From NCBI GenBank assembly GCA_002269645.1, contig NIVC01000694.1, forward strand, positions 1-64,000: DNA of 64,000 nt, written 5' to 3'. The position numbers were made by a program, and so were the translations under genes. This document shows positions 23,726 through 46,895 of this stretch, piece by piece; the first letter of the stretch is position 1; each line of letters starts with the position of its first letter. The notes beneath the pieces were generated by a model, which searched no databases, was not told the DNA's origin, and worked only from the letters and a program-made list of their open reading frames with translations. This DNA comes from Macrostomum lignano. Lineage: Eukaryota.

Positions 23726-28436
<4,711 letters not shown>

Positions 28437-28854: not shown

Positions 28855-30510
28855 TGACCAATTATCTGTTTTTTGCTTTTGCTGACCAATTATTAGTTTT
28901 TTGCTTTTTGCTGACCAATTATTAGTTTTTTGCTTTTTGCTGACCAATTATTTGTTTTTTTGCTTTTTGCTGACCAATTATTTGTTTTTTGCTTTTTGCT
29001 GACCAATTATTTGTTTTTTGCTTTTTTGCTGACCAATTATTTGTTTTTTTGCTTTTTGCTGACCAATTATTTGTTTTTTGCTTTTTGCTGACCAATTATT
29101 AGTTTTTTGCTTTTTTGCTGACCAATTATTTGTTTTTTTGCTTTTTGCTGACCAATTATTTGTTTTTTGCTTTTTGCTGACCAATTATTAGTTTTTTGCT
29201 TTTTTGCTGACCAATTATTTGTTTTTTTTGCTTTTTGCTGACCAATTATTAGTCTTTTGCTTTTTGCTGACCAATTATTAGTCTTTTGCTTTTTGCTGAC
29301 CAATTATTAGTCTTTTGCTTTTTGCTGACCAATTATTAGTCTTTTGCTTTTTGCTGACCAATTATTAGTTTTTTGCTTTTTTTGCTGACCAATTATTTGC
29401 TTTTTTGCTTTTTGCTGACCAATTATTTGTTTTTTTGCTTTTTGCTGACCAATTATTTGTTTTTTGCTTTTTGCTGACCAATTATTAGTTTTTTGCTTTT
29501 TTGCTGACCAATTATTTGTTTTTTTTGCTTTTTGCTGACCAATTATTTGTTTTTTTTGCTTTTTGCTGACCAATTATTAGTCTTTTGCTTTTTGCTGACC
29601 AATTATTAGTCTTTTGCTTTTTGCTGACCAATTATTAGTCTTTTGCTTTTTGCTGACCAATTATTAGTCTTTTGCTTTTTGCTGACCAATTATTAGTTTT
29701 TTGCTTTTTTTGCTGACCAATTATTTGTTTTTTTGCTTTTTGCTGACCAATTATTTGTTTTTTCTTTTTGCTGACCAATTATTAGTTTTTGCTTGTTTGC
29801 TGACCAATTATAAGTTTTTTGCTTTTTTGTTGACTAATTATAAGTTTTTTGCTTTTTGCTGACCAATTATTAGTTTTTGCTTTTTAATTGCTGACCAATT
29901 ATTTGTTTTTTCTTTTTGCTGACCAATTATTTGTTTTTTTGCTTTTTGCTGACCAATTATTTGTTTTTTCTTTTTGCTGACCAATTATTAGTTTTTGCTT
30001 GTTTGCTGACCAATTATAAGTTTTTTGCTTTTTTGTTGACTAATTATAAGTTTTTTGCTTTTTGCTGACCAATTATTAGTTTTTGCTTTTTAATTGCTGA
30101 CCAATTATTTGTTTTTTGCTTTTTGCTGACCAATTATTTGTTTTTTTTGCTTTTTGCTGACCAATTATTAGTCTTTTGCTTTTTGCTGACCAATTATTAG
30201 TCTTTTGCTTTTTGCTGACCAATTATTAGTCTTTTGCTTTTTGCTGACCAATTATTAGTCTTTTGCTTTTTGCTGACCAATTATTAGTTTTTTGCTTTTT
30301 TTGCTGACCAATTATTTGTTTTTTTGCTTTTTGCTGACCAATTATTTGTTTTTTCTTTTTGCTGACCAATTATTAGTTTTTGCTTGTTTGCTGACCAATT
30401 ATAAGTTTTTTGCTTTTTTGTTGACTAATTATAAGTTTTTTGCTTTTTGCTGACCAATTATTAGTTTTTGCTTTTTAATTGCTGACCAATTATTTGTTTT
30501 TTCTTTTTGC
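28855..30510. repeat. T-rich ~27-30-bp satellite with higher-order blocks
   Basis: Core GCTGACCAATTATT(T/A)GT(T)nGC(T)n; a distinctive variant block recurs near 29790, 29995 and 30380. Confidence 0.95.
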
Positions 30511-31454
30511 TGACCAATTTATTTGTCGTTTCTTCTGTCGCTGACCAATTATTTGTTATTTTGCTTGTCACTGATCAATTGTTTATCGTGTCTTCTGTTT
30601 CTGACAATTTTTTGTCGTTTCTCCCGTTGCTGACCAATTATTTGCCCTATCCTGGTTGCTGTATGCCATGCTTTTGCGCTGGTTCGCTGTCAATATTTAT
30701 TTTCAGTTTCTGGTTTCAGTGGCGAATTTTATTGAGTCAAAAGAATTTGGTTAAAATAAAAATTTTGCACCTGCCAGCCTAACTCTAACGATGCCATGGC
30801 TTGAGAAAAGTCACTGAGATTCCATTGGTTAATGTGGAATGCTGAGATGCCATGGCTTGAGAAAAGTCACTGAGATTCCATTGATTAGTGTGGAATGCTT
30901 GGCGCTGTCCAAGCTTGGTATCGGGCGTGTTGTTGCTTCTTCAGCTCTAAACAAAATTTAATCTCTAAATAAACAATTGTGACTATGCACGGCTTTTACA
31001 TGTAGATTACATGTACATGGGGCCAAGATCGCTAGCATGCCAGCCTACAAGAGATCCACTTCTCATCCTATTCATGCTACTCATCAGTAGTCAATCTCAT
31101 AAGATAAAAAATGCAGCAAATAAAAGATGAAGCTCGTAGGCAATTCTGATTTTTACAGAATCAGTGCACAGATCTGCTGCAACAGACAAATGAAGGGTGC
31201 TGAGCAGCCGCACTTGCATGTATTCAAGGCAGTAAGAATTAAACTGTGATTGTTGGTCCAACCAGAGCAGAGCTGAGTTTTGAATGACCTTCGGATTCAG
31301 CGCGAGAATATTTAATTGGCAGGTGAATTGTTTTCATTGCGTTACAAAATCGGGTGAGAGTGGATATAAAAACAAGTTCAGAAAAGATAACAAAAGGCGA
31401 AACACAACTTCAAAAACTCCAGCTTCAGCAAAAAGCTCCATCTTTTTGGAGGTA

Positions 31455-31562
31455 CAGCCTCATCAGCCCGCTAGTCCAGCCTCATCAGCCCGCTAGTCCA
31501 GCCTCTGCATCAGCTGGTCCAGCCTCATCAGCCCGCTAGTCCAGCCTCTGTATCAGCTGGTC
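31455..31562. repeat. 22-bp repeats built from the 3' end of the HAD gene
   Basis: GCTAGTCCAGCCTCATCAGCCC units contain the reverse complement of AGG CTG GAC TAG. Confidence 0.8.
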
Positions 31563-32252
31563 CAGCCGCTCAATCCGCAGCTCCTGGGGGACGTCGGCGG
31601 CCTCGCGGCCGGCTGGGTCCAGCAGCAGCGCCCGGAAGCCGCAGGCGCGCGCGGCCTCGAAGTCGTTGCGCCGATCGTCGCCGACGTGCAGGATGGCTCC
31701 GGGCTCCTCGCCGAGCCGCTTGGCGGCCAGCGCAAAGATGTGGGGGTCCGGCTTGACGAGGTCGGCCTCGAAGCTGGAGACCACGGCGGCGAACCTGTCG
31801 GCCACGCCCAGACAGGCCAAGATGTCCGGCAGGCGGTCGTCGAAGTTGGACAGGACGCCCAGCTTCAGGGAGCGGGCGGCTAGCGCCTCCAGCGTCTCCG
31901 AGCAGCCCTCGGTCAGCTCCACGGCGCCCGGAGTCTTGTAGAAGTTCCTGAGATTCTTGCACATGATCTCGGGAACGTCCTTCGGCTTCAGGGCGCCGTC
32001 GGAGGCTGCCACGAACAGGCGGCGGATGAACTCGCTCCACCAGGCCTCGGCGGTGGCCGCGCCGCTGGCACGGTCGAAATTCGGCCGCTCCGTCAGCATG
32101 GTGGACAGCGTGGAGGGCACGGCGGCGTCCAGCCGCTCCTGGCTGACGGCATCGATGCCGTAGCTCTTGGCGTACTTCAGGTACTGGTAGCCCACCGACT
32201 TGCGGGCCCGGACCAGCGTTCCCCACGCGTCGAATGTGACGGCTGCGAGTCT
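31536..32252 (-). CDS. HDHD3: HAD-superfamily hydrolase (HDHD3/REG-2-like); exon begins at an AG acceptor, start Met not encoded locally
   Basis: RLAAVTFDAWGTL (motif I), VLSNFD (II), KPDPHIF (III), HVGDDRRND (IV). Pyrimidine tract plus CAG at 32255-32253 immediately precedes AGA CTC GCA in phase 0. Confidence 0.85.
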   Translation of the reverse strand, partial: RLAAVTFDAWGTLVRARKSVGYQYLKYAKSYGIDAVSQERLDAAVPSTLSTMLTERPNFDRASGAATAEAWWSEFIRRLFVAASDGALKPKDVPEIMCKNLRNFYKTPGAVELTEGCSETLEALAARSLKLGVLSNFDDRLPDILACLGVADRFAAVVSSFEADLVKPDPHIFALAAKRLGEEPGAILHVGDDRRNDFEAARACGFRALLLDPAGREAADVPQELRIERLDQLIQRLD

Positions 32253-32271
32253 CTGCGGACGAGGCGATGGG

Positions 32272-32760
32272 GATTGGGAGGCTGGGCACTGGCTTGATGC
32301 AGCTGAGGATGCTGAGGACTGGCATGATGCAGTTGAGGATGCTGGGGACTGGCCTGATGCAGATGAGGATGTTGGGGACCGGCCTGATGCAGCTGAGGAT
32401 GCTGAGGACTGGCCTGATGCAGTTGAGGATGCTGGGGACTGGCCTGATGCAGATGAGGATGTTGGGGACCGGCCTGATGCAGCTGAGGATGCTGAGGACT
32501 GGCCTGATGCAGTTGAGGGTGCTGTGGACTGGCATGATGTAGATGAGGATGCTGGGGACTGGCCTGATGCAGATGAGGATGTTGGGGACCGGCCTGATGC
32601 AGATGAGGATGCTGGGGACTGGCATGATGCAGTTGAGGGTGCTGTGGACTGGCATGATGTAGATGAGGATGCTGGGGACTGGCCTGATGCAGATGAGGAT
32701 GTTGGGGACCGGCCTGATGCAGATGAGGATGCTGGGGACTGGCCTGATGCAGCTGATGAT
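32272..32760. repeat. 30-bp minisatellite, ~16 copies
   Basis: Unit GCTGGGGACTGGCCTGATGCAGATGAGGAT with variants; directly upstream of the HAD acceptor. Confidence 0.95.
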
Positions 32761-33054
32761 TAACGAATCGACAAAGAAATCTCGCAAATCCAATAAATTC
32801 GTTAACACAGTAACAAACTTTTCTATTATGAAATCGTAGAAAGAAAAAATATTGCAAACCAATAAAAAGGGAATTTGATGCATTGAAAACGCCATATTTC
32901 ACCACGACGCTATTGATTTCAGTGGGTAAAACAACGACAATGTCTGGATAGGAATTGCAAAAAGATAAATAGGAATTTATACTTGTTTATATCTGGAAGG
33001 ACACCCATAGGGAATACAAGGCGGAATCGCGAATTATTTTAAGCATGAGGCTGA

Positions 33055-33508
33055 GCGTGATTCTCATGTGTGATTCTCAGAGCTGTGATTCTCAGGTGTG
33101 ATGCTCGTGTGTGATTCTCAGGTGTGATTCTCAGAGCTGTGATTTTCAGAGCTGCGATTCTTACAGCTGTGATTCTCATGTGATTCTCAGACTGTGATTC
33201 TCAGGTGTGATGCTCGTGTGTGATTCCCAGGTGTGATGCTCGTGTGTGATTCTCAGGTGTGATTCTCAGAGCTGTGATTCTCAGAGCTGTGATTCTTAGA
33301 GCTGTGATTCTTAGAGCTGTGATTCTCATGTGTGATGCTCGTGTGTGATTCCCAGGTTTGATGCTCGGGTGTGATTCTCAGGTGTGATTCTCAGAGCTGT
33401 GATTCTCAGGTGTGATTCTCAGACTTTGATTCTCAGGTGTGATGCTCGTGTGTGATTCCCAGGTGTGATGCTCGTGTGTGATTCTCAGGTGTGATTCTCA
33501 GAGCTGTA
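33055..33508. repeat. Mixed 13-15-bp tandem repeat
   Basis: GTGTGATTCTCAG / GCTGTGATTCTCAGA / GTGTGATGCTC units. Confidence 0.9.
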
Positions 33509-33907
33509 CCACTGGGGGGGGGGCGTAGGCGCCGCAATCAGGCCGAGGGCCCCTATCGCAGGATTCTTCACAAATTCTCAGATACAATCCATAGGTGCGA
33601 TTCACAGGTGCAATTCACAGATGTGCTTCTCAAGTGCGATTGTCAGGTGTGATTCTCAGAAAATAAAGCATATTTTGTAAATCTTGTAAGCAGCGCTGCA
33701 TAGCAGGTGAAAGCAACACAAAAGCACAAAATGCCATGACGGAAAGCGGCGCACACTGCAGCTGTAAAAAATGACCAGCAGAAGCAGAGCAGAAAACTGT
33801 AACTCAGGAGAATACCGATTAATGCATGGCAAACAAGAGCCAACTACCTGATTCCGCATAAAAATCGCAGAAAATATTAATTCAAAACTTCTCAATCAGT
33901 CTGCCTA

Positions 33908-35536
33908 TCAATGACCAGCTGCCGCCTCCTTGGCGTGGAGCAGCGAGTGCCTCTTCAGGTGTTTGCTCTTCAGGAAGCGCCTGCCGCAGAGCTCGCAGGC
34001 GAACGGCCCGTCGCCGGCGTGGGACGGCAGTTGGCGCCGCAGCCAGGCCGGGCTGGCGAACACCCGGCCGCAGTGCCTGCAGCGGCTCCCCCCGCCAGCT
34101 GTGCCGGCGGCTGCTGGCTCGGCCCCGCCAGCGCCCGGCCTCCCAGCCTCCCTGGCGTGGGTCAGCGAGTGCCTCTTCAGGTGGTCGAGTCGGGAGAACA
34201 GCAGGCCGCAGCGCTCGCAGGCGAAGGCCCGCGTGCTGGCGTGGCACAGCAGGTGGCGCTTCAGCTTATACGGATTGCTGAACACCTTGCCGCACTGCTC
34301 ACAGCTGGCCTCCGCCGGCACTGGGGCGGCCCTGCTGCCGGCGCCCTGATGACCTCCTGGCGGGTCTGGGCTGCTGCCCGCGCTCTGATGACCTCCTGGC
34401 GATTCTGGGCCGCTGCCCGCGCCCTGATGACCTCCCGGCGATTCTGGACCGCTGCCCGCGCCCTGATGACCTCCTGGCGATTCTGGGCCGCTGCCCGCGC
34501 CCTGATGACCTCCCGGCGAGTCTGGACCGCTGCCCGCGCCCTGATGACCTCCCGGCGAGTCTGGACCGCTGCCCGCGCCCTGATGACCTCCTGGCGAGTC
34601 TGGGTCGCTCTTCATCACGTGGCTGAGCACGTGCTCCAGGTACAGCGGCAGGCGCAGCTGGCCGAAGCTCTGGCAGCAGACAGGACAGTCCGGACAGTTG
34701 GCCATGTCGCGCCAGACTCGCATCCTTGACGCGTGCTTGGCGCCCCGGTGCCGGCACAGAGCGGACTTGGAGGCGTAGGTTCGCTGGCAGACGTCGCAGC
34801 TGAACGCCTGGACGCCGTTGTGGGCCCTCATGTGCAGGCGGAGGCTGCGGTAGGTAGGGAGCAGCTTGCAGCACACCAGGCACTGTCTGGGCCCGTCGGA
34901 GCCTTCGCTGCTGGCAGCCTTCACGCCGCACTGAGCCGACCTGCAGTGCGCCCGCAGAGTGTAGAGCTCCCAGAAGCCTCTGCCGCAATTTTGGCACCTG
35001 TGCGGCTTTTCCTTGACGTGATGGACCAGCAGGTGTCTCCTCAGGTGGGTGGACTGGATGAAGCACTTGTCGCAACGGTCGCATTTGAAAGGCCGCTCGC
35101 CGCTGTGCACCCGGAGATGGGTGTTGAGGGTACTGAGCTGGCGGAAGCGCTGGTCGCAGTGCTGGCACTGGAAGGGCCGCTCGCCGCTGTGCACCAGCCG
35201 GTGCCGCCTCAGGCCGGTCGGGTAGGTAAACGACTTGCTGCAGTGCTCGCAGTCGAGCCGCTTCTTTGTCTGCACCAGCAGCTTTGAGCTTCTCTGACCG
35301 GCCCCGCCAGCAAGTTCAGCTGAGGTCGGTGGGTCCTCTCGATTCCCTTCGGCATCAGGTTTCTCCAAACCGTCCACCAACTGATCCGCACTATTCGGCA
35401 CCCTTGATGGCCGGATCACGTACTCATCCTTGATGTTGGCGGGTTCCGCCGCGGCCGCAGGCTCAGGACTGGCCGCATCGGGCAGGCGGCAGACCAGAAA
35501 GTCGCCGATGTCGCACAAATGGCCGAGCTCTGCCAT
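33908..35536 (-). CDS. C2H2 zinc-finger protein, 542 aa, ~11 fingers (some degenerate)
   Basis: CxxC..HxxxH repeats with HSGERPF linkers; seven in-frame 13-aa repeats between finger clusters. Confidence 0.92.
   Translation of the reverse strand: MAELGHLCDIGDFLVCRLPDAASPEPAAAAEPANIKDEYVIRPSRVPNSADQLVDGLEKPDAEGNREDPPTSAELAGGAGQRSSKLLVQTKKRLDCEHCSKSFTYPTGLRRHRLVHSGERPFQCQHCDQRFRQLSTLNTHLRVHSGERPFKCDRCDKCFIQSTHLRRHLLVHHVKEKPHRCQNCGRGFWELYTLRAHCRSAQCGVKAASSEGSDGPRQCLVCCKLLPTYRSLRLHMRAHNGVQAFSCDVCQRTYASKSALCRHRGAKHASRMRVWRDMANCPDCPVCCQSFGQLRLPLYLEHVLSHVMKSDPDSPGGHQGAGSGPDSPGGHQGAGSGPDSPGGHQGAGSGPESPGGHQGAGSGPESPGGHQGAGSGPESPGGHQSAGSSPDPPGGHQGAGSRAAPVPAEASCEQCGKVFSNPYKLKRHLLCHASTRAFACERCGLLFSRLDHLKRHSLTHAREAGRPGAGGAEPAAAGTAGGGSRCRHCGRVFASPAWLRRQLPSHAGDGPFACELCGRRFLKSKHLKRHSLLHAKEAAAGH
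34336..34607 (-). repeat. In-frame coding VNTR, 39 bp x7 (P[D/E]SPGGHQGAGSG)
   Basis: CTGATGACCTCC recurs every 39 nt. Confidence 0.9.
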
Positions 35537-36366
35537 CGGCGGCGCGGCCCTGGCAGCAAAACCGACAGGCAGGCAATCAGGTGATAATGAGCTGGCCTAC
35601 CAGGCAGTGTACGTACCCAGACTATATATACAGACTTTGGTATACAGACTTTGGTTCCCCATGAAAACGGTACCTAAGCGAAGCGTCCCAGAGCCACTTG
35701 CGTCGCTCCAGAGTCGTTTCAGAATCGTTGCAGATGACAGGTAAAATAGGACATATGATGTCACGGTACAAATCGCCTAAGAGTAACTTTAAAGCGTTTT
35801 ACTCTGGGGCGACGGCACATCGACTCTGTGGCCGTAGAGTCGTATTTGAGGCGTGCTGGAGTCGCTGCAGAGTCACTGAGTTGTGCTTGAAGCGTTACAT
35901 CTCTATGGGAAAGTTAAGCGCCAACTCAATGATTCTTGGAGGGCTCTTTCACGCTTCTACAACTCACGTGACGCGCTTGTGACGCAACTCCGTCGCATTA
36001 GACACGTTTGAGTCGTTAAAAAGTCATAACAGAAGCCGCAGAATGGTTTTTTGTCATGGTATCTTTTTTAGCGGGTTCCCTGGCAAAAAGTTTAAAACCC
36101 CGAAATTAGCTAATGATAAATTTTATCAGACCTACTAGTCCAGTACAAAAGAAAACTCAATTGCAAAGAAAATCTGCTATAATGTTATAAAAAAGGACGG
36201 AGTTAAATCGCAGTGCAGTTTTTTTGTGAAACAGACTTGCATATCAATAGTTAAGCAGCTACACATAACAACAGTACAAATGTTCCAGCAACTGCAAAAG
36301 ATTAATTTTTAAACCCTAATAACACAATGAAATGGCATCTTGGAGGAGTCTGGCAGACGCAAGCGC

Positions 36367-37425
36367 TCAGGACAGGAAGAACAGGTCCTCCAGCACTCCG
36401 GAGTCGTCATCGCCAGACTCGTCACCCTCGCCTTCGTCAGCGTCGCCGAAGCCGCCGAAGGCCTCGCCATCGATCTCCTCCTCCTCATCGTCGAACTGAG
36501 GGCCGTCGAGCGACTCGACGATGTCCAGCAGCGAGTCCGGCCGCGGCGACGGCGATCTGGGAGGCGGCGGCCGCACTGGGGTTCGCCGAATCCGCGACCG
36601 CGCCGGCGGCTGCGGCGGCCCGAGCACCTCCGGCAGGACGAAGAACTCGTCGGCGGAGTCGGCGTGCGGCTGGCGCAGAATCCGGTTGCCTCCGCTGCGG
36701 CCACCGGCGGCTGCGGCGCCGCGGTCCCGCGGGCCTTCGTTGTCGGGCAGCTTCTTGGCGCTGACTCCGCTGAGCTCGCGCAGCTGCCGGCAGAGGTGCC
36801 GCTGGGTCCGGTCGGTGAGCCGCAGCTGCTGCCGCAGCAGCGCCAAGATGGCGTCGTCGTCCTCGCCGGGCTGCGGCTTGGCGCCAGACGGGGCAGCGCC
36901 GATTTCTCGGTCGATCCGCTCTGTAAAGGCGCGCCGCCGACCGCCGGACGACACAGGAGGGGCCTGCTTTGGCGGCGGCGGCGATGGCGATGGCTTTGTC
37001 GACTCGTCGCACTGGCTAGCGACGCTGCGCGGACCCCGCCGCCGCTCAGTATCGGCCGCCAGGCGGGCCTCCAGCTCCGCCAGGGTGCGCCGCTGCCGCT
37101 CGAGGTCGGCGCGCAGGCTGTCCACCTCGCGACGGCGCAGCTGGCGCTCTTCGGCGAGTCCCTTCTCGGCGCGCGCCTTCGCCTCGGCCAGGTGGCCGAG
37201 CTCGGACACCAGCTCGGCCAAGCGCTGCCGCTCCGCGGGGCCGAGGTCGGCAAAAGACCGGAGCTGCTGGGGAGGTTGTGGGGGCGGCGCAGATTCTGTC
37301 AGCTGCTGCTTCTGCGGCTGCGCCGGCCGCTGTCGCTTTTTGGCCGCAGGGCTGGCGGCGTCGGGCTCCCTCAGGCCGGACACCCAGGCGGCTTTCGGCC
37401 GGGTGTCCAGGCGCTGCTGGTCCAT
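36367..37425 (-). CDS. KIAA1328: Hinderin/KIAA1328-like coiled-coil protein, 352 aa
   Basis: SFADLGPAERQRLAELVSELGHLAEAKARAEKGLAEE resembles the hinderin conserved block ([28 protein letters not shown], from memory); acidic C-terminus; coding-like GC bias. Confidence 0.65.
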   Translation of the reverse strand: MDQQRLDTRPKAAWVSGLREPDAASPAAKKRQRPAQPQKQQLTESAPPPQPPQQLRSFADLGPAERQRLAELVSELGHLAEAKARAEKGLAEERQLRRREVDSLRADLERQRRTLAELEARLAADTERRRGPRSVASQCDESTKPSPSPPPPKQAPPVSSGGRRRAFTERIDREIGAAPSGAKPQPGEDDDAILALLRQQLRLTDRTQRHLCRQLRELSGVSAKKLPDNEGPRDRGAAAAGGRSGGNRILRQPHADSADEFFVLPEVLGPPQPPARSRIRRTPVRPPPPRSPSPRPDSLLDIVESLDGPQFDDEEEEIDGEAFGGFGDADEGEGDESGDDDSGVLEDLFFLS

Positions 37426-37631
37426 CGGAGGAAGCAGGCCGGTCAGGAACTGACGCTATGGACCTCGCGACCGCCCGGTAGCTGCAGTATGTGCGGGGCC
37501 GGGTTCGAGAGCTATTTAGGTAACGCATGGGAATCAGGCTAGAGTAATGCTAGATGCTAGAGTAACTTTCAGGGAGTTTCTAGTCCATTTGGGAACATCT
37601 AATCCTTTAGCTAATACTCAAGCACCTTAGG

Positions 37632-38555
37632 GCGATCCCATCCCTACTTATCCAATGGAGATCCCATCCCTACTCTTCCAGGGAGATCCCATCTCTTACT
37701 CCTTCAGAAAGATCCCATCCCTACTCCACCAAGGATATCCCATCTCTACTCCTTCTGGAGACCCCATCTCTACTCTTCCAAGGGAGATCCCATCCCTACT
37801 CCTCCAGGGAGATCCCATCCCTACTTCTCCAAGGAAGACCCCATCCCTACTCCTCCAAGGAAATCCCATCCCTACTCCTCCAGGAGACCCCATCCCTACT
37901 ACTCCAAGGAGGTCCCATCCCTACTCCTCTAGGGAGACCCCATCCCTACTCCTCCAGGGAGACCCCATCCCTACTACTCCAAGGAGGTCCCATCCCTACT
38001 CCTCCAGGGAGACCCCATCCCTACTCCTCCAGGGAGACCCCATCCCTACTACTCCAAGGAGGTCCCATCCCTACTCCTTCAGGGAGACCCCATCCCTACT
38101 ACTCCAAGGAGGTCCCATCCCTACTCCTCCAGGGAGACCCCATCCCTACTCATCCAGGGAGACCCCATCCCTACTCCTCCAAGGAGATTCCATCCCTACT
38201 TCACCAAGGGAGACCCCATCCTTACTCTTCGAGGTAGATACCATCCCTACTCGTCGAGGTAGACCCCATCCCTACTCCTCGAGGTAGATCCCATCCCTAC
38301 TCCTCCAAGAGAGACCCCATCCGTACTCCTCGAGATAGATCCCATCCCTACTCCTCCAAGAGAGACCCCATCCCTACTCCTCGAGGTAGACCCCATCCCT
38401 ACTCCTCCAAGAAAGACCCCATCCCTACTCCTCCAAGAAAGACCCCATCCCTACTCCTCCAAGAAAGACCCCATCCCTACTCCTCCAAGAAAGACCCCAT
38501 CCCTACTCCTCCAAGAAAGACCCCATCCCTACTCTTCGAGGTAGATCCCATCTCT
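37632..38555. repeat. ~25-bp degenerate minisatellite
   Basis: Unit AGGGAGACCCCATCCCTACTCCTCC with variants. Confidence 0.92.
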
Positions 38556-38878
38556 AGAGCTTCAGTGTCCTCACAGAGCTGTTGAAAGTCCAAGCCAGAT
38601 GTGTAAGCTGAAGTCAAATAATGAAGCAAAGACTGCAACGATTAATTATGGCTAAGAGTACAGGGGCTACAGTGCAGTCATTATATTTATTATATTAATT
38701 TAATATTTCCGTCCCAATTACTTAAGTTTTACAAATTAACAAAGCAGCTCAGATGTTGAGCTCATTCCAGACGCTGTTAAGACCCAGCAGCTCACTGGCT
38801 GCACTACACGGCTATGCTACAGGGGCAAATAAGCAGTTTACATATTTCAAAATATAGATGAGTCAGATGAGTCAGCGT

Positions 38879-39148
38879 TCACTTCTGATCCGGGATGCCC
38901 TCCAGCGAGATGGTCTTGTAGATGGCCTTGTTGCCGGACAGGGCGCCGCCGAACAGGTTGCGGTAACCGGCCTGGTGGACGAGGCGCTGGTCGCGGGCGA
39001 ACAGCGGGAAGTCGTAGGCGTCGTTGAGGACGGCGCGCTGGTACCAGCGCCGGTCCCGCAGCGTGTAGTTGCCCGCCCAGTGCAGCACTTGGAAGGCGTT
39101 CATGCAGATAAACACGAGGGCCGCCGAGGGAATAATTTCGTACCACAT
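38879..39148 (-). CDS. NDUFA1: NADH dehydrogenase 1 alpha subcomplex subunit 1 (MWFE), 89 aa
   Basis: Starts MWYEIIP (cf. MWFEILP), one TM helix, L-x-x-RD-x-R, ends SLEGIPD (cf. GLENID). CTGCAG acceptor 13 nt upstream of ATG; AATAAA at 38691-38686. Confidence 0.85.
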   Translation of the reverse strand: MWYEIIPSAALVFICMNAFQVLHWAGNYTLRDRRWYQRAVLNDAYDFPLFARDQRLVHQAGYRNLFGGALSGNKAIYKTISLEGIPDQK

Positions 39149-39359
39149 CGCTGCTGATGCTCTGCAGACTACTCACAACTGGCAGTAGTAATAGTAGTGC
39201 AGTGCGGTCGCGTGGACCATGCAAATTGTAAATAATAAAAGCATCAGCTATCCTCATATTGGCTCATTGATGTCAGAAAAACATGGAGTCCTTGGTACAA
39301 AAACTAGATTGGAAACTCCGACTACACGCGCCCTAGGTTCCTGGGTTCGATTCCCGTAA

Positions 39360-40184
39360 GTTTCCAATCTAGAAAGCTATTCTAGAAGTCCATGATCCCC
39401 ATCCCACCAGCACAAGTATCGGTGAGTTTCCAATCCAGACAGCTATTCTAGAAGTCCATGATCCCCATCCCACCAGCACATAAATCGGCAAGTTTCCAAT
39501 CCAGACAGCTATTCTAGAAGTCCATGATCCTATCCCACCAGCACAAGTATCGGCAAGTTCCCAATCCAGACAGCTAGTCTAAAAGTCCATGATCCCCATC
39601 CCACCAGCACAAGTATCGGCAAGTTCCCAATCCAGACAGCTAGTCTAAAAGTCCATGATCCCCATCCCACCAGCACAAGTATCGGAGAGTTTCCAATCTA
39701 CTTCAGCTAGAGAGCTATTCTAGAAGTCCATGATCCTATCCCACCAGCACAAGTATCGGTGAGTTTCCAATCCAGACAGCTATTCTAGAAGTCCATGATC
39801 CCCATCCCACCAGCACAAGTATCGGTGAGTTTTCAATTCAGAGTTATTCTAGAAGTCCATGATCCTATCCCACCAGCACAAGTATCGGTGAGTTTCCAAT
39901 CCAGAGAGCTATTCTAGAAGTCCATGATCCCCATCCCACCAGCACAAGTATCGGCAAGTTCCCAATCCAGACAGCTATTCTAGAAGTCCATGATCCTATC
40001 CCACCAGCACAAGTATCGGTGAGTTTCCAATCCAGAGAGCTATTCTAGAAGTCCATGATCCCCATCCCACCAGCACAAGTATCGGCAAGTTCCCAATCCA
40101 GACAGCTATTCTAGAAGTCCATGATCCTATCCCACCAGCACAAGTATCGGCAAGTTCCCAATCCAGACAGCTAGTCTAAAAGTC
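39360..40184. repeat. 66-bp minisatellite, ~12 copies
   Basis: Unit GTTTCCAATCCAGACAGCTATTCTAGAAGTCCATGATCCCCATCCCACCAGCACAAGTATCGGTGA; starts at 39426 and 39492. Confidence 0.95.
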
Positions 40185-40988
40185 CGTGAGCAAACACGAA
40201 AGGAATAAAGTAGCGAAAGCCAGGCAACGATTAGAAGACTTTGCTCATCTTGGCTACATATTTGCCTTTCAATTTATATCTGCTGCGCATAAACAGAGCC
40301 AGACAGAGCCGCATTTTAGGCACGGAAAGCAAAGGTGCGGCTGCTGTACAGACAGCCAGCTGCCTCGACAAAATTACACAGAGGGCGCAGAGCTGGCTGG
40401 GCAACATGGCTGAAGGGTGGAGACTGCGGACCTCCCCGGAACACATGCCTGCTGCTACTAGGAGCAGCAATTTCGTTAGCAGGGGAACAATGCCGGGAGT
40501 CATCAATTAGTCATGACTGACAAGTTGCGGACCCGGCGGAGCAGTGAATGCGGGGTCAAGCAGCTGAGCCGCTGCATGCAGGAAGCTGGTTCAGCTGCAT
40601 CACTGGCCAACTGTGAGCTGCAGGCGCAGCGGGGGCCGGGGCACTTCTAGCACTGCGTGGTGAGTGCATGAGGCGCTAGCGAAAACAGAAGCTCTTTTGC
40701 CAATTTTGGCAGATGGCGTTTTACATTTTAAAAGTTTTTTTGTGGTCAGAGAGACGAGAGAAGCAGACCGATTGCAACAGAAATGCTGAATTGCCATTCA
40801 AGTAATTTGCTTACAGCTGCCTGCTGGAAATGAAACATCTTTGCAGGTTACAATTGCACCTATTGTACTTTATGGTTAGCATGCAGCTAAATTAGCTAAC
40901 TGAAGCGTGTGAGCGAATCAGTCACACAGAGACTGCAATACTGCCTGGGGATGCCGCCTGGTCTTCTCGTGTTGTAAAAAATACAGTT

Positions 40989-41342
40989 GCTCAGCCTGAG
41001 GATCTGGGAGGCTGGCTGCTTAGCCTGAGGATCTGGGAGGCTGGCTGCTCAGCCTGAGGATCTGGGAGACTGGCTGCTCAGCCTGAGGATCTGGGAGGCT
41101 GGCTGCTCAGCCTGAGGATCTGGGAGGCTGGCTGCTCAGCCTGAGGATCTGGGAGGCTGGCTGCTTAGCCTAAGGATCTGGGAGGCTGGCTGCTTAGCCT
41201 GAGGATCTGGGAAGCTGGCTGCTCAGCCTGAGGATCTGGGAGGCTGGCTGCTTAGCCTGAGGATCTGGGAGGCTGGCTGCTCAGCCTGAGGATCTGGGAG
41301 GCTGGCTGCTCAGCCTGAGGATCTGGGAGGCTGGCTGCTTAT
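40989..41342. repeat. 29-bp minisatellite, ~12 copies
   Basis: Unit CTCAGCCTGAGGATCTGGGAGGCTGGCTG. Confidence 0.95.
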
Positions 41343-41438
41343 TCTGACAGTACGAAAGGCTAAAGAAAGCTAAGGACCTATATAGCAGGGGACCCCAGCG
41401 CAAACAGGTAGTCTCAGTCAGACGGGTCAGCCAGGCCG

Positions 41439-42206
41439 TCAGCCCAGCCGCTTGCGCTGCAGCACGATGCTGATGCCCAGTAGCACAGTCAGGTTGTCCA
41501 CCAGCAGCCTGGCGTGGCACCAGAAGTCCATGCCGACCCGGTACAGCCAGTAGTTGGGCCGCATATCGTTGGCGAGGGTGACGCAGAGCATCGTGCAGGC
41601 CAGCAGCTTGAGGGCGCCGTAGAAGCTGACGTTGGACAGCAGCGCCAGGCCGGCCATGCAGTAGAGGATGGCTACGACCCAGTGCGCCTGCGGCACGAAG
41701 TCGCCGATATTGCGGCGCAGCGCCTCCGCCTCCTCAGGCACGGTGGCGAAGGCGTAGGCGGAGCCGATGGCGAAGACGCCAAGCAGGGAGCGGCCGGCCT
41801 GACGCAGCTGCCCGGAGGTCGAGGCCAGCGTGTCGCAGATGGCGGCGAAGTAAAGGAAGACGGCGCAGCAGCCCAGGCTGGGCAGGGCGAGGCGGGCTCG
41901 AACCCAGGACTTGTAGCGCAGGGCGGGCGCGGTGACGGTGAGGTAGGCCATGTACATGAGCAGGCCGCAGTAGATAAGCAGCGCCTGCCGCCTGCGGATG
42001 TTCAGGGAGACGGCAAAGCCCAGGGCCACGCAGCCGAACACCAGCACGTAGATGAGGCGGGGAGCTAGCGGCGGCTCAGACTCCCGCTTGGCCCGCTCGC
42101 TCAACAGCATCAGCAGCGTCAGGGCGTTGGCGAAGGGCACCCGTGTGAACAGCACCACCAGAAACTTGAAGGACATGCTGCCTGCTGTGCTCTCCTGCTG
42201 CGCCAT
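41439..42206 (-). CDS. TMEM101: Transmembrane protein 101, 255 aa
   Basis: LFTRVPF, LMLLSERA, WVRAR and DFWCHARLL correspond to TMEM101 LLTRCPF, LMLYAERA, WLKVR and EFWNQMKLL; multi-pass hydrophobicity; TTGCAG acceptor 8 nt upstream of ATG. Confidence 0.85.
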   Translation of the reverse strand: MAQQESTAGSMSFKFLVVLFTRVPFANALTLLMLLSERAKRESEPPLAPRLIYVLVFGCVALGFAVSLNIRRRQALLIYCGLLMYMAYLTVTAPALRYKSWVRARLALPSLGCCAVFLYFAAICDTLASTSGQLRQAGRSLLGVFAIGSAYAFATVPEEAEALRRNIGDFVPQAHWVVAILYCMAGLALLSNVSFYGALKLLACTMLCVTLANDMRPNYWLYRVGMDFWCHARLLVDNLTVLLGISIVLQRKRLG

Positions 42207-44948
42207 TGGCTGCTCTGCAACAGAGGCAGTGAGAAGTCAAATTGCAAGATTTTAAGATTTCAAAGCAGATTGCGATAATAGAAACAGTCTTAGACAGTCA
42301 CAGCTACTCTTTGTCATTGATCCGGACAACGTTCCCGGGTTTCTGAGGCATGCAACATTTATGCACACAAGGAAGGGCCAATCAACCTCCAGATTACTGT
42401 ACTTGTCTGACATGTGTGCTCTAGCTGTGGGTCGAACCTAGTCAGAAGCTGAGCCAGAACCCACAGCCGATCACGCATTCGGGGCAAGTCCGACCCCGTG
42501 TTTCTCACTGCTACAATAATATTTAATGGACTCCTAAATCTCCTTGTCGTAAGCTCATGGATGCAATGCTCCAGTAAGCAGGAAGCATCGTATCAAACAG
42601 ACAGGATAAACCTCTGAGACTTGAATTACATTGGGAAAGGGTTGGTCAAACGGCTGTATAAAATAATACGAGATGACCTATACTCGTAGGCTACAGAAGA
42701 AGGTAGACAAAACAAGAGATCGATTCCCGACGATATTCGCTTTGACCGATCAAAGCCTTCCTTCCAGACTTTCATATCAGACCATAAACCGCCCATGTGC
42801 ATCCATGTGCCACGCCCACAAACCGATGCAGCATTTAGTATATGGAATTGAGACACTGCTCCGATGTGACACAATTCACCTCGACACCAAGATGGACAGA
42901 CAGACAGCCAACACAGGCCCGACAGCGAGTCCAAGACGCAAATTCAAGATCAGCGCACAGATGAAGGGAGCACAAGGCAATAATACAAGGCCGGCCTAAA
43001 GCAACTAAAAGACGGCGCATGAAGGCTACGCAGGGAAGCGGAACCAGGTAGCTGCATGGGCGAGGGCATCGGGAGAGCATCAAATTACAGATCCGCCCAC
43101 GCAGTCAGTTATAAAAAAACACTGCAGCTGCCTCCCATCCTATTGTCGCTAACTACATTAGCGCAGAGATGCGAGACGCCGAGGCAACAGGAGTTGAAAT
43201 AGGAGGCGCGGTCAGCCGCCAGCAATTACCAAAGCAAGAATCTCAAAGCAGAGGCAACTAAGCAGAGATTAATGCTAGTCCAGTTGCTCATCACTGGTAC
43301 TTCCTATTGTTACCAAGGCTTTGGATAGGCGGTAGCAGCTGACCCTCGGCCATCGTTGGCTAACAAGCTTGGCAAAGCAACCCAGATGCCACACAAAGCA
43401 TAAAATCAATCAGCTCTTGGCAACGGCTGCTGCACAACCCCAGCCTCCCCAGTGGTTAAACTGGACTGGAGACGCCAATGCAGCCAGTGATCAAGTAGTC
43501 AAGAGTTGAAATTGAATCCGCTGCGCAGGGGCAACGCGTCTATTTGTGCATAGAAATGATTGGCATTTAGCATTTTAATGACGATGAGAGTTGCAACAGG
43601 AGCCGGGCAAAACTGGGAGAGACAAGCGGGGCGCCTGTGGCGACTACAATGCGGGCTGCCAATGCAGGTCCGGGGATGCGGTGAGCACAGGATCTCATTT
43701 GTAGATTTGACTACAGGGAATTCATGATGGGACACCAATTTGCTCTCCCAACACGGAGCAAACAATCAAACTGTGAGCATGCAATGCAACCCCTCCCGAG
43801 GTTCACGCAGGACTCATTAGGCTATGCAGATGAAGGTAAGCGACCGGAGATGCACAGAACAAGTATCGCGTCAGCATAGAGGCCGGGCAATGCGCGGCAA
43901 GATAGCCACAGTTAAAAATATGAGCAGAAAATTGATGAAAAGCTTTGACCAATACAACCGGTCTACAAGCTGACAAACACTTATTTGCACTGGCTAATCC
44001 ATGTCTCATCGAGAATGTTTGCATGCATGGAGACAAAAATCCATCACCATTCCGAGTCCCCTACTCCAGCGCCGATAATGAGATCCCTAGTCGTGTCTAT
44101 CCCCCCCCCCGACAGTGAAACCCGGGCAATACCTCGGCAGTCCCCAGTGCTACATGCGCCATGACGCAGGGACAGCCGGATCCCATGCATGGAAGCCCAG
44201 CTGCCAGCTCCCATGCTGCCGGGCCGCATCCCGGTATTTCTACTCGAACGGAAGGTGAGGAGCTGAGGCGCAAGACAAGGAGGGCGCAGGCCTTCGATTG
44301 ACAGGCATCGACCCTGTGAAGTGAAATCCCGAGTGAGACAGACTGGGAGGTGTCGGCAGGGAGGGGGCGATCACTGCCGAGCGAGGCGCGCCTGCTATTG
44401 ACCAGAGTGCGCAGACGGGCAAGTGCGCCAGACTGCAGCAGAAATCAATGGGGACGGCTAACAGGACAGCGGGAACAGGAGGGAGAGCGTCTTTCCGCGG
44501 CGGTGAGCGCGCGGGACCCGTCAAACAGCTGGCCCGGGGACGAATTGCAAAGGCGAATGCCAGCCGCAGTAGGCAGGCTGGGTCAGGTGCAGCTTCCTGC
44601 TGTGACGGTGTAATTGTCGCCAGGGCAGGCCGGGCTCTCGCTAGCATTCCCTTCGACCTTTATATTCATCCCAGATCCAAGGCCCCAACCAAAAAGTGCA
44701 TACTAACCCCCATAATATTCCTCTCTGTTCTTTTTACATGGATCAGCAAAATGGTGATATGTGAGAGACAGACGGGGGAGTAGAAATGCGAAAAAGTCGC
44801 GTAAGAAAATTCCTCCATAGCGTACAGAATTGGTTTAGAAGGTCATAGTAATCTCAGAGCACAGGGTTGCGATGTCCATCATGATAAAACATGTCCATCA
44901 ACTGTCATTAGCCAGTCATAGGCACACTGAATACTCTACAGTTGCGTT

Positions 44949-46895
44949 CTACAGTTGCGTTTCAGTTTCCGGCAGCTGTTTCTGGCTGCTGCTGCCGTTG
45001 CCAAGCCGGTTGTCGGGACGCCGCCGGCGACTGCTGCCGCTGCGGTGCACAACAACGGAGGAAGCGCAAACAGCGCTGGTACCCGAGGTGGACGCGGCTG
45101 AGTCAGAGGCCGAAGCAGAGGCGATCTGCTGGCGCGCTGCCAGCAGGTAGTCACGAATGAGGTGCGCCGCCTGGTTGGCCTGGCGGCAGTGCAGCGACAG
45201 GCGGCCCTGGCCACGCAGCTGAAGGGACAGCTGGGCGCGGCTGTCGGAGCCAAATCCGAGCAGGTCCGGGTAGGAGAACGCGGCTAGCGGTGTCGACCGC
45301 CGCCAGTCAGCTTCGACAACATCGCAATCGTTGTCGTCAGCGCCGGCAACGGCAGACTCCGGCAGGAGCTGCAAGCCCGCTTCGCCGACAGCGAGAGCGC
45401 AGGCGTCTCCAATGGTCGTAGTGGCCGCCGCCAGCGGGCTGTGGAGGCGGGCGGGGAAGACAGCGCAGCCAAACAGCGGAGATGCGGAGCGGCAGGCAGC
45501 CAGGAGCTGCAAGTCGAGGGCACGTCGGCGGTCCGGGCCATCTTCAGGGGCGGCGCCGGCCGCCACAGAGGCGGCAGCAGTGGCGGCTGCGAGCACAGCG
45601 TCGAGCGGGACGCGGTTGCGCCAGCGCCGAGGCAGGATCCGGCGCACGAGGCTTGGGTCGGTGCCGGCTGCGGAGGCTTCCCGGGCTGCCTGAAGGCCGC
45701 AAAGTTTGGTCGCCAGGTCCAGCGTGAGCGGCAAGCGGGCCTCGAACACGTCAGTGAGGCACTGGTGCGCCATCAGTGACACCTCCACAGCATCAGACTC
45801 GTCGACATAGGGCTCTATGAAGAGGCGCTTCTTCAGCACCAAGCGGACCAGCATCGGGCTGCCACTGAGCTGGCCGTGCTGCTCCCAGCGGAACAGAGTG
45901 TCGCCGATGAACTCAGCCGGCCCCGTGCAGCGCTCAGGCGCGCCAGGAAATTGCTCAAACAGAGACCAGCCGGTGGCGCCGGGCCGCAGCGGCACCTGAG
46001 CGATGACCGCGGCTGAGGCCTCCGCGCCAGTCAGGTAGGAGTGAAACTCTAGCTGGCGAGTCTCTCCGTTCAACAGGTGGACGCTGACGCGCGCATTGGC
46101 GCGAGCGAAGGTGGCTGCGAGCTCCGAAGCCGAGGGCGGGAATCTCCGCCTGGCAGGCCGGGCAGGTCTGGCGAGGCAGGCGAGGCAAAACTGCGCGCAG
46201 AGAGCCGGGTCACCTGACGGCTGCTGCCTAGACAGGTGAGCCAGGTGGCAGCGGAGAAGTCGCAGGACTGGCTCCCAGGCCGGTCTGAGGATGGCACAGG
46301 CTGCGCAGAGGAGCTGGTGCGGTCGGGGCGTTGTGGGCGGATGACTGCCTGACGATTCGCAGCTTGTTTGGCGCACGAGCTGCAGAAAGAGCTCGCTGGT
46401 GAGGCGGTCCGAGTCAAGGCAGCGCTGCAGCACCGCCTGCACAGTTCGGACCACAGCGGATTCGTCCAGGGTGGCGGCCCGCTCAACCAGGTGAATTGCC
46501 GCGGAGAATTTTACAGCAGCGGAGCGCGCCGTCTCGGAGGTGTGAATGAGCAACGGTTGCTTTAGCGGGGCCGCAGCCCGCGTCCAGTAGGCCTGCTTGA
46601 AGCAGACCGGGTCCGTGCAGCCAGCCGGCACCGGCGTTGGCGGCGTCACAAGGGGCTCCGACGGAGAGTCTCCGCCATTTTGGCTTCCCCGATTGGCGTC
46701 GCCGCTTCCGCCGCGCTGTCGGCGCTTGGCCCGACTGAGGAGTCGCAGTAGTGCGGACGCCGCGGCCTCCTGCGGCGGCTTAGCAAGGGCGCCAGAGGCT
46801 ATTAGAGCGCGCCGACAGTCGACTAGAGAATCAGGAGACGCCGAGGCAGCAAATAATGCAGACTCCGAGGTAATCGCTGCTGCTTCATCGGCCAT
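44949..46895 (-). CDS. MyTH4-FERM domain protein (PLEKHH/MAX-1-like), 648 aa
   Basis: MyTH4: YWTR...PLKQPLL..ELFLQLVRQT..RRFPPSxxE. FERM: VSVHLLNG..GWSLFE..D.L.RWE..RLVLKKRLF; LFGCAVF. Confidence 0.8.
   Translation of the reverse strand: MADEAAAITSESALFAASASPDSLVDCRRALIASGALAKPPQEAAASALLRLLSRAKRRQRGGSGDANRGSQNGGDSPSEPLVTPPTPVPAGCTDPVCFKQAYWTRAAAPLKQPLLIHTSETARSAAVKFSAAIHLVERAATLDESAVVRTVQAVLQRCLDSDRLTSELFLQLVRQTSCESSGSHPPTTPRPHQLLCAACAILRPAWEPVLRLLRCHLAHLSRQQPSGDPALCAQFCLACLARPARPARRRFPPSASELAATFARANARVSVHLLNGETRQLEFHSYLTGAEASAAVIAQVPLRPGATGWSLFEQFPGAPERCTGPAEFIGDTLFRWEQHGQLSGSPMLVRLVLKKRLFIEPYVDESDAVEVSLMAHQCLTDVFEARLPLTLDLATKLCGLQAAREASAAGTDPSLVRRILPRRWRNRVPLDAVLAAATAAASVAAGAAPEDGPDRRRALDLQLLAACRSASPLFGCAVFPARLHSPLAAATTTIGDACALAVGEAGLQLLPESAVAGADDNDCDVVEADWRRSTPLAAFSYPDLLGFGSDSRAQLSLQLRGQGRLSLHCRQANQAAHLIRDYLLAARQQIASASASDSAASTSGTSAVCASSVVVHRSGSSRRRRPDNRLGNGSSSQKQLPETETQL

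What the first reader, a model, noticed from the sequence alone, without database searches (positions are those of the whole stretch)
31536..32290. HAD hydrolase with no genomic start codon: candidate for initiation from the spliced-leader AUG
Seen: the frame is open for ~170 codons upstream with no ATG. The first in-frame ATG (32100) lies after catalytic motif I. A pyrimidine tract plus CAG (32255-53) is followed in phase 0 by AGA CTC GCA GCC GTC ACA TTC GAC. Known: flatworm spliced-leader exons end in AUG, which can serve as the initiator Met (shown in Schistosoma). Inference: trans-splicing yields MRLAAVTFDAWGTL, a typical HAD N-terminus, so the gene would be translatable only after trans-splicing. 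The hinderin-like gene has a similar in-frame option (TAG acceptor 37458-56, adding MRQFLTGLLPP).
Basis: partly seen in the sequence, partly recalled or inferred. Interest (0 to 1): 0.7.

Follow-up and report, generated by a model that had tools for sequence, protein, structure and literature searches.

The report
Flatworm enzyme gene borrowing its start codon
This Macrostomum lignano gene for an HDHD3-like hydrolase has no start codon of its own and most likely gets one from the spliced leader added to its mRNA, a mechanism known in flatworms since 2006, so it is a sound but ordinary example.

Summary
The window is Macrostomum lignano, Mlig_3_7 scaffold NIVC01000694.1:1-64000. On the minus strand, 32252..31536 encodes a complete HDHD3/REG-2-like HAD-IA hydrolase. 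It has no in-frame genomic ATG before Met52, which lies after the catalytic Asp. A C-rich tract plus CAG (32255-32253) sits directly in front of it.

The "170 open codons" upstream are not coding. They are a 16-copy 30-bp minisatellite that is stop-free in all three frames.

The M. lignano spliced leader ends in ATG. Joined at this CAG it gives MRLAAVTFDAWGTL.

Support is indirect:
- GenBank annotates both intact copies as 5'-partial.
- The family profiles are covered from position 2-3 onward, so no coding exon is missing.
- The coding sequence is under purifying selection (9 synonymous versus 3 non-synonymous codon differences).
- No conserved upstream exon exists.
- In a paralogous copy, the 4 bases before the junction read GCATG, the last 5 bases of the leader. 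This is probably an imprint of leader-bearing RNA-seq reads, because the assembly was polished with RNA-seq.

No junction reads were seen directly. The mechanism is already known (Schistosoma, 2006), so this is a new member of a known kind. The hinderin-like gene has its own conserved ATG and does not need the leader.

The parts
31536..32252 (-). HAD-IA (HDHD3/REG-2-like) hydrolase coding region: 238 codons plus TAG, no genomic initiator ATG. GenBank annotates 32243..31536 as a 5'-partial CDS of 235 aa.
32253..32255 (-). CAG, the proposed spliced-leader trans-splice acceptor (site A). The exon starts at 32252, in phase 0 with the leader's AUG.
   Evidence: Conserved in scaf1367. In scaf20 the same columns read ATG.
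32256..32290 (-). C-rich polypyrimidine tract in front of the acceptor. It is identical in all three copies.
32243..32244 (-). Second AG (site B, GCAG|CC), 10 nt downstream of site A. A leader AUG joined here would be out of frame and open a 22-codon ORF. The annotated CDS of the window copy starts at 32243.
32229..32231 (-). GAC codon of the catalytic nucleophile Asp (motif I, FDAWGTL). It is residue 8 of the genomic ORF and residue 9 once the leader's Met is added.
32097..32099 (-). First in-frame genomic ATG (codon 52), downstream of motif I.
32277..32760 (-). 30-bp minisatellite of 16 copies in the presumed outron. It is stop-free in all three frames and carries out-of-frame ATGs at 32655, 32625, 32535 and 32325.
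33057..33501 (-). 13-bp satellite of about 33 copies between the zinc-finger gene and the HAD gene. It contains the only nearby GTAAG (33164), a single-copy variant of the repeat unit.
33908..35536 (-). Upstream same-strand C2H2 zinc-finger gene, a possible operon partner. Its stop codon lies 1655 nt before the acceptor.
31455..31567 (-). Tandem duplication (43-bp unit, 22-bp sub-period) that repeats the last codons, the stop codon and the start of the 3'UTR.

Best explanation
The gene is a complete, intronless HDHD3/REG-2-like HAD-IA hydrolase whose initiator codon is not in the genome. Its pre-mRNA starts either at its own promoter or as the tail of the upstream same-strand gene cluster. It carries a long outron full of satellites and out-of-frame AUGs. 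The 35-nt M. lignano spliced leader, whose last three bases are AUG, is trans-spliced to the CAG at 32255-32253. The outron is discarded. The only AUG of the leader lands in phase 0 before AGA CUC GCA, and translation gives a 239-aa protein, MRLAAVTFDAWGTL..., with the nucleophile Asp at position 9. Shown here: the gene anatomy, the lack of a genomic start, the completeness of the N-terminus, purifying selection and the sequence of the leader. Inferred: use of this particular AG, and initiation at the leader's AUG.
For: (1) The window is identical to NIVC01000694.1:1-64000 of M. lignano Mlig_3_7. That species' leader ends in ATG followed by a GTAAG donor (PMC8629364). PMC10468722 notes that the terminal ATG of the leader is a likely start codon in Macrostomum. 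(2) There is no in-frame ATG between the stop near 32762 and Met52. (3) No N-terminal coding exon is missing. TIGR02252 aligns profile positions 2-203 of 203 to residues 4-210, PF00702 aligns 3-191 of 191 to residues 4-205, and human HDHD3 (3k1z) aligns from its residue 4. A bacterial homologue starts MTTAVWFDLDGTL in the same columns. (4) GenBank annotates both intact copies as 5'-partial without a start codon. The scaf20 copy (PAA93799.1) starts exactly at AGA. (5) In scaf20 the junction reads CGCATG|AGACTC, against CCGCAG|AGACTC in the window and in scaf1367. This is the only run of 4 or more mismatches within well-aligned sequence across 18.5 kb (flank identity 0.98), and the result equals the last 5 nt of the leader. 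Mlig_3_7 was polished with Pilon using RNA-seq reads (PMC5730564), so the block is best read as an imprint of leader-AGACTC junction reads. If the ATG is real instead, it shows that MRLAAV... is the functional N-terminus. (6) Between the window and scaf20 copies the CDS has 9 synonymous and 3 non-synonymous codon differences and no indels, whereas the flanks are 5-11% divergent with indels. (7) An unspliced leader would carry six upstream AUGs in a frame that overlaps almost the whole CDS. (8) Use of the leader's AUG as initiator is established in flatworms: Cheng et al. 2006, as summarised in PMC9851317 and PMC12582326.
Against: No RNA read or cDNA with the leader-AGACTC junction was seen directly. 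The annotated 5' end of the window copy is 9 nt downstream (32243), next to a second AG where the leader's AUG would be out of frame. Annotated 5' ends of neighbouring genes differ among copies, and one (TMEM101 on scaf20) starts right after a genuine genomic ATG, so these ends are not nucleotide-reliable. The acceptor CCGCAG matches the published [T/C]TNCAG motif only in its CAG. The polishing-imprint reading rests on a single site; no second example occurs in the 20 kb that could be compared. The near-identical scaf1367 copy carries a frameshift.
Confidence: 0.75

Rival explanations
1. The window copy (and its duplicate on scaf1367) is a start-less, decaying paralogue. The functional gene is the scaf20 copy, which has a real genomic ATG at the same codon. 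The CAG in the window is just a mutated start codon.
For: The scaf20 assembly reads GC ATG AGA CTC. scaf1367 has a 1-nt deletion in GGGG at the column of window 32224 and no gene is called there. One T insertion or deletion interconverts CATG and CAG.
Against: The window CDS is intact. The overall 9:3 ratio of synonymous to non-synonymous differences argues against long neutral decay. The scaf20 difference is a 4-base block that reproduces the leader's tail, in an assembly polished with RNA-seq. The scaf1367 frameshift lies in a homopolymer, a typical PacBio error. GenBank annotates the scaf20 CDS as partial, starting after the ATG.
Confidence: 0.1
2. Trans-splicing occurs, but mainly at another AG. 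One possibility is site B (32244-32243), which gives an out-of-frame 22-codon ORF and little or no enzyme. Another is an in-phase AG inside the minisatellite, which gives a Ser/Ala/Pro-rich N-terminal extension.
For: The annotated CDS of the window copy starts at 32243, 1 nt before the site B exon. Thirteen further in-phase AG sites lie upstream. Neighbouring genes show several alternative annotated 5' ends among closely spaced AGs.
Against: Site B would make a conserved gene untranslatable. The minisatellite differs between copies by a 1-nt indel and in copy number, so an extension is not conserved. The GCATG imprint and the scaf20 CDS start both point to site A. Site A has the most pyrimidine-rich upstream 20 nt.
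Confidence: 0.1
3. A cis-spliced upstream micro-exon supplies the ATG. An example would be ATG 33179 followed by GTAAG at 33164, 5 codons in phase 0, spliced to the CAG.
For: ATG 33179 is in phase, and a GTAAG follows 15 nt later.
Against: Both lie in a 13-bp satellite. The GTAAG is a one-copy variant of CTCTGAGAAT, and none appears in the scaf20 stretch read (L001 9000-9240). The only other GT[AG]AG within 2.7 kb lies inside the zinc-finger CDS. The ORF opened by the upstream ATG at 32895 hits a TAA after three codons in scaf20. The RNA-seq-based gene models of neither copy include such an exon.
Confidence: 0.03
4. Translation starts at a non-AUG codon, or at Met52, on an mRNA that is not trans-spliced.
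For: No upstream genomic ATG exists, and Met52 is the first genomic one.
Against: Starting at Met52 removes the nucleophile Asp and strand 1 of the fold. Six out-of-frame upstream AUGs would intercept scanning ribosomes.
Confidence: 0.02

Closest known systems
Schistosoma mansoni mRNAs that use the 3'-terminal AUG of the spliced leader as initiator methionine (Cheng, Cohen, Ndegwa and Davis 2006, J Biol Chem 281:733; cited in PMC9851317, PMC12582326, PMC5832876)
   Same: A flatworm leader ending in AUG is spliced in phase to an ORF that lacks its own start codon. [quoted passage not shown]
   Different: The species is a different, free-living flatworm (Macrostomorpha). Here neither the junction nor the translation has been shown experimentally. 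A paralogous copy shows ATG in the assembly at the same codon.
slORFs: ORFs created by spliced-leader addition (Song et al. 2023, PMC9851317)
   Same: The start codon is supplied by the leader, so genome-only annotation misses it or marks the protein as partial.
   Different: slORFfinder was applied to nematodes, ascidians and euglenozoans with ribosome footprints. No such data were used here, and M. lignano was not analysed there.
Human HDHD3 (PDB 3K1Z) and the REG-2-like HAD-IA subfamily TIGR02252
   Same: Best solved-structure match, E 1.2e-23 over residues 5-234. TIGR02252 is covered at profile positions 2-203 of 203. Both share a short N-terminus, an SNFD motif II, a KPDP motif III and a motif I that lacks the second Asp.
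   Different: The score of 153.6 bits is 1.6 bits below the curated cut-off. Motif I is DAWGT here against DVKDT in HDHD3. The substrate is unknown.
M. lignano trans-spliced genes and operons with repeat-filled spacers (Ustyantsev and Berezikov 2021, PMC8629364; Wudarski et al. 2017, PMC5730564)
   Same: Same organism and assembly. The paper reports that 30% of genes are trans-spliced, that CAG acceptors dominate, and that repeats inflate distances between operon genes. Here five same-strand genes are separated by satellites.
   Different: Those papers do not analyse use of the leader's AUG as a start codon. The HAD gene is annotated as its own transcriptional unit.

Membership tests
Flatworm mRNAs initiated at the spliced-leader AUG | The organism's spliced-leader exon ends in AUG directly before the GU donor | tested here: met
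   The window belongs to M. lignano Mlig_3_7. The leader sequence ends in ...TTGCATG followed by GTAAG (PMC8629364). No leader gene lies in the window.
Flatworm mRNAs initiated at the spliced-leader AUG | An AG acceptor with a pyrimidine tract lies immediately upstream of the ORF, in phase 0 | tested here: met
   CCGCAG|AGA at 32255-32253|32252, with 75% pyrimidine over the 20 nt upstream. It matches the [T/C]TNCAG motif only in CAG.
Flatworm mRNAs initiated at the spliced-leader AUG | No genomic in-frame AUG is able to give a functional protein | tested here: met
   No ATG occurs between the upstream stop and Met52. Met52 lies after the nucleophile Asp.
Flatworm mRNAs initiated at the spliced-leader AUG | The leader-to-exon junction is observed in RNA | tested here: inconclusive
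   Only indirect evidence is available: 5'-partial GenBank CDSs and a GCATG block at the junction in the RNA-seq-polished scaf20 copy. No reads could be searched.
Flatworm mRNAs initiated at the spliced-leader AUG | Translation starts at the leader's AUG | not testable with these tools
   This needs ribosome profiling, N-terminal proteomics or a reporter assay.
HAD superfamily, subfamily IA, REG-2-like/HDHD3 (TIGR02252) | Profile score at or above the curated cut-off | tested here: inconclusive
   153.6 bits against a cut-off of 155.2, full-length coverage, E 5.8e-45. The Pfam families PF00702, PF13419 and PF13242 all score above their gathering cut-offs.
HAD superfamily, subfamily IA, REG-2-like/HDHD3 (TIGR02252) | Catalytic motifs I-IV are present | tested here: met
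   Invariant columns are D8, G11, T12 (motif I), S135, N136 (motif II), K167, P168 (motif III) and G191, D192, D197 (motif IV), and the protein aligns to HDHD3.
Downstream gene of an M. lignano operon | Same-strand upstream gene with a repeat-adjusted spacer under 1 kb and trans-splicing of the downstream gene (criterion of PMC8629364) | tested here: inconclusive
   The spacer from the zinc-finger stop to the acceptor is 1655 nt. About 1000 nt of it are tandem repeats, leaving roughly 640 nt. A joint transcript was not shown, and the HAD gene has its own unit name.

The most novel reading that the evidence does not exclude
The ATG in the scaf20 paralogue is real. Paralogous copies of one gene then make the identical protein in two ways: one from a genomic CATG start codon, the other from a CAG trans-splice acceptor plus the leader's ...CATG. 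Because the leader ends in CATG and acceptors end in CAG, a single-base indel would toggle a gene between owning its start codon and borrowing it, with no change in the protein. This would be a simple evolutionary route into and out of dependence on trans-splicing.
Probability: 0.15. Interest if true: 0.55.

Novelty: new member of a known kind. Interest (0 to 1): 0.3.

Why it matters
It gives a concrete M. lignano case of a mechanism proven in Schistosoma: a conserved enzyme gene that can be translated only after the leader is added. Three practical consequences follow. First, GenBank proteins of this model flatworm that are marked 'partial' may in fact be complete apart from the leader-encoded Met. 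Second, genome-only gene finders will mis-start or discard such genes. Third, the GCATG block in the paralogue suggests that polishing Mlig_3_7 with RNA-seq may have written leader bases into the genome at trans-splice sites, creating false genomic start codons. That is worth a genome-wide check.

Tried and rejected
- Leader gene in the window: none, even with up to 3 mismatches. No TTATTGCATG occurs in the paralogous locus L001, the only locus held at that point.
- Gene name Mlig023196: absent from the paper library and from the held supplements of PMC8629364 and PMC5730564.
- RNA-derived contigs or proteins: the exact-sequence look-ups returned only Mlig_3_7 records for this gene and its neighbours, and no RNA-derived contig or protein starting MRLAAV came up.
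- Cis-splicing: a scan for GT[AG]AG donors and upstream ATGs found only a chance variant inside a satellite and a site inside the zinc-finger CDS.
- The 170-codon open frame as evidence of coding: rejected. It is a minisatellite, all frames are open, and frame-breaking indels separate the copies.
- One rule (0-3 leader bases left after trimming) to explain all annotated 5'-partial starts: none fits every case, so these ends were down-weighted.
- More Mlig_3_7 gene starts, to test whether the GCATG imprint is systematic: two window ORFs are not on record. A Kv-channel query returned no protein named as M. lignano, only unnamed fragments and one Schistosoma entry.
- A second imprint in the three aligned 20-kb copies: none found.
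- Horizontal transfer as an explanation for the GC-rich, intronless gene: not pursued. Neighbouring genes are equally GC-rich and the best solved relative is human HDHD3.

Full report
**What is there.** On the minus strand, 32252..31536 holds a 238-codon ORF ending in TAG.
- It matches Pfam PF00702 (74.8 bits), PF13419 and PF13242.
- It matches the REG-2-like HAD-IA subfamily TIGR02252 over profile positions 2-203 of 203. The score is 153.6 bits, against a cut-off of 155.2.
- The best solved relative is human HDHD3, PDB 3k1z, at E 1.2e-23, aligned from chain residue 4.
- Motifs I-IV are present: D8-G11-T12, S135-N136, K167-P168 and G191-D192-D197.
- The profiles are covered from their second or third position, and a bacterial homologue begins MTTAVWFDLDGTL in the same columns. 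Nothing but the initiator Met is therefore missing.

**Source.** The closest database protein is "BOX15_Mlig023196g1, partial [Macrostomum lignano]", 99% identical. A look-up of the neighbouring 89-aa gene returned three Mlig_3_7 scaffolds. One of these loci is base-for-base the reverse complement of window 28879..49148, with record coordinates equal to window coordinates. The window is therefore NIVC01000694.1:1-64000 of GCA_002269645.1.

**The observation.**
- The frame is open back to a TAA near 32762 with no ATG.
- The first in-frame genomic ATG is at 32099-32097 (codon 52), after the nucleophile Asp codon at 32231-32229.
- The open stretch is not coding. It is a 30-bp minisatellite of 16.1 copies at 32277-32760.
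- All three minus-strand frames are open across it. In the paralogous copy it differs by 1-, 3- and 6-nt indels.
- CAG at 32255-32253 follows a C-rich tract (75% pyrimidine in 20 nt) and precedes AGA CTC GCA GCC GTC ACA TTC GAC in phase 0.
- An in-phase AG is not remarkable in itself: 14 of the 44 AG sites in the 600 nt upstream are in phase.

**The leader.** The M. lignano spliced leader is CGGTCTCTTACTGCGAAGACTCAATTTATTGCATG, followed in its gene by GTAAG (PMC8629364). Its only ATG is its last three bases. Joined at site A, it gives a 239-aa ORF beginning MRLAAVTFDAWGTLVR. The authors of the M. cliftonense and M. hystrix genomes note that the terminal ATG of the leader is probably a translation start (PMC10468722). 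In Schistosoma mansoni the leader's AUG is in frame in 28% of trans-spliced transcripts, and more than 40 cDNAs need it (Cheng et al. 2006, as summarised in PMC9851317; also PMC12582326).

**Three copies of the locus.**
- scaf1367 (L004) is 99.8% identical to the window over the gene. It has the same CCGCAG|AGACTC junction. It has a 1-nt deletion in a GGGG run at the column of window 32224, and no gene is called there.
- scaf20 (L001/L003) is a syntenic paralogue, 89-95% identical in non-coding DNA.
- Between the window and scaf20, the CDS has 9 synonymous and 3 non-synonymous codon differences and no indels. This indicates purifying selection.

**Annotation.**
- GenBank annotates the scaf20 CDS as 5'-partial, starting exactly at AGA (PAA93799.1).
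- The window CDS runs 32243..31536: 235 aa, starting AVTFDAW, with no start codon.
- The window's start lies 9 nt downstream of site A and 1 nt before the exon of a second AG (GCAG|CC). A leader AUG joined there would be out of frame and open a 22-codon ORF.
- The annotation pipeline set 5' ends from leader-containing RNA-seq reads (PMC5730564).
- These ends are not nucleotide-reliable. The three TMEM101 copies have three different starts, and one begins right after a genomic ATG that all copies share.
- I therefore take them only as evidence that the mRNA 5' end lies at this cluster of AGs, and that no upstream coding exon was seen.

**The junction in scaf20.**
- It reads CGCATG|AGACTC instead of CCGCAG|AGACTC.
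- This is a block of four consecutive mismatches. About 45 nt upstream and 123 nt downstream are identical.
- Across 18.5 kb of aligned sequence it is the only run of four or more mismatches in well-aligned context (flank identity 0.98). All other such runs lie in poorly aligned or repeat sequence.
- The new bases spell GCATG, the last five bases of the leader.
- Mlig_3_7 was polished with Pilon using Illumina DNA reads and RNA-seq reads mapped with STAR (PMC5730564).
- The simplest reading is that reads starting inside the leader's tail overwrote the genome. This would happen in the one copy that paired reads can place uniquely; the other two copies are near-identical to each other.
- If so, the block is a fossil of leader-AGACTC junction reads.
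- If the ATG is real instead (a deletion of C plus an insertion of T would do it), it shows that MRLAAV... is the functional N-terminus of the paralogue. The window copy can reproduce that N-terminus only through the leader.
- Either way, site A is favoured. I found no second imprint in the 20 kb available, so the artefact reading rests on one site.

**Alternatives.**
- Cis-spliced upstream exon. The only GT[AG]AG motifs within 2.7 kb are a one-copy variant inside the 13-bp satellite (33164, with an in-phase ATG at 33179) and a site inside the zinc-finger CDS. None appears in the scaf20 stretch read (L001 9000-9240). The ORF opened by the upstream ATG at 32895 hits a TAA after three codons in scaf20.
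- Unspliced mRNA. It would carry six upstream AUGs in a frame that overlaps almost the whole CDS. Removing the outron is therefore needed in any case.
- Start at Met52. This would delete the nucleophile Asp.
- Decaying copy. This cannot be excluded but fits the 9:3 substitution pattern poorly.

**The hinderin-like gene.** The in-frame option after TAG (37458-37456) exists. However, all three copies have a conserved genomic ATG GAC CAG (window 37425), and the annotation uses it. The leader's AUG is not required there.

**Context.** Five genes lie on the minus strand: TMEM101, an 89-aa gene, the hinderin-like gene, a C2H2 zinc-finger gene and the HAD gene. The spacers are 2290, 1453, 830 and 1655 nt. 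GenBank names (Mlig030440.g1.g4.g7) place three of the first four (TMEM101, the zinc-finger gene and the hinderin-like gene) in one transcriptional-unit family; the 89-aa gene's name was not seen. About 1000 of the 1655 nt before the HAD gene are tandem repeats. The repeat-adjusted spacer of roughly 640 nt is below the 1-kb operon threshold of PMC8629364. The HAD gene may therefore be the last gene of a polycistron, but this was not shown.

**Verdict.** The mechanism is well known, the terminal ATG of the leader in Macrostomum has been remarked on in print, and GenBank already flags the protein as partial. This is a new member of a known kind. The most interesting residue is technical or evolutionary: either RNA-seq polishing has written leader bases into the reference genome, or paralogues toggle between a genomic CATG start and a CAG acceptor.

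Noticed in passing
L001 9996-10000 (NIVC01000020.1, about 423,992-423,996), aligned to window 32257-32253: The paralogue has GCATG, the last 5 bases of the spliced leader, where the window has CGCAG. It is the only 4-mismatch block in well-aligned sequence. The assembly was Pilon-polished with RNA-seq, so leader-bearing reads may have been written into the genome and created a false ATG.
   Followed up: partly
L002 6955, L003 7165, L004 7074 (TMEM101; window about 42194): The three copies of TMEM101 have three different annotated 5'-partial CDS starts within 25 nt. The scaf20 copy starts right after a genomic ATG that all copies share. No single read-trimming rule explains all of them.
   Followed up: partly
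window 31455-31567 (-); L001 10700-10990 and beyond: The last codons, the stop codon and the start of the 3'UTR of the HAD gene are tandemly duplicated (43-bp unit, 2.3 copies). The paralogue has a long 22-bp array after its stop codon. The gene is thus flanked by minisatellites on both sides.
   Followed up: no
window 31536-42194 (-): Five consecutive same-strand genes: TMEM101, an 89-aa gene, the hinderin-like gene, a C2H2 zinc-finger gene and the HAD gene. GenBank names seen for three of the first four indicate one transcriptional-unit family, which suggests an operon with satellite-filled spacers.
   Followed up: partly
window 561-674 (-): Rfam RF00485, the potassium-channel RNA editing signal, scores 53 bits against a gathering score of 51. 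It lies inside a Kv1-type channel gene at the scaffold start, and that gene's reading frame breaks just before the pore region.
   Followed up: no
L004 near 16830, aligned to window 32224; L003 about 14204: The scaf1367 HAD copy has a 1-nt deletion in a GGGG run. The scaf20 zinc-finger copy changes frame at residue 216/217. These are either homopolymer assembly errors or real inactivations of paralogues.
   Followed up: no
window 24385-28436 (+) versus L001 12787-17364 (-): A 1525-aa CBM_20-annotated gene is one intact ORF in scaf20. In the window copy it is split over several frames.
   Followed up: no
window 50693-53189 (-): Fragmented reverse-transcriptase (RVT_1) and integrase (rve) ORFs of an LTR-type retroelement remnant.
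   Followed up: no
window 32247-32252 (-): The first six exon bases, AGACTC, also occur inside the leader (GCGAAGACTCAA). This is probably chance, but it could confuse leader trimming.
   Followed up: no
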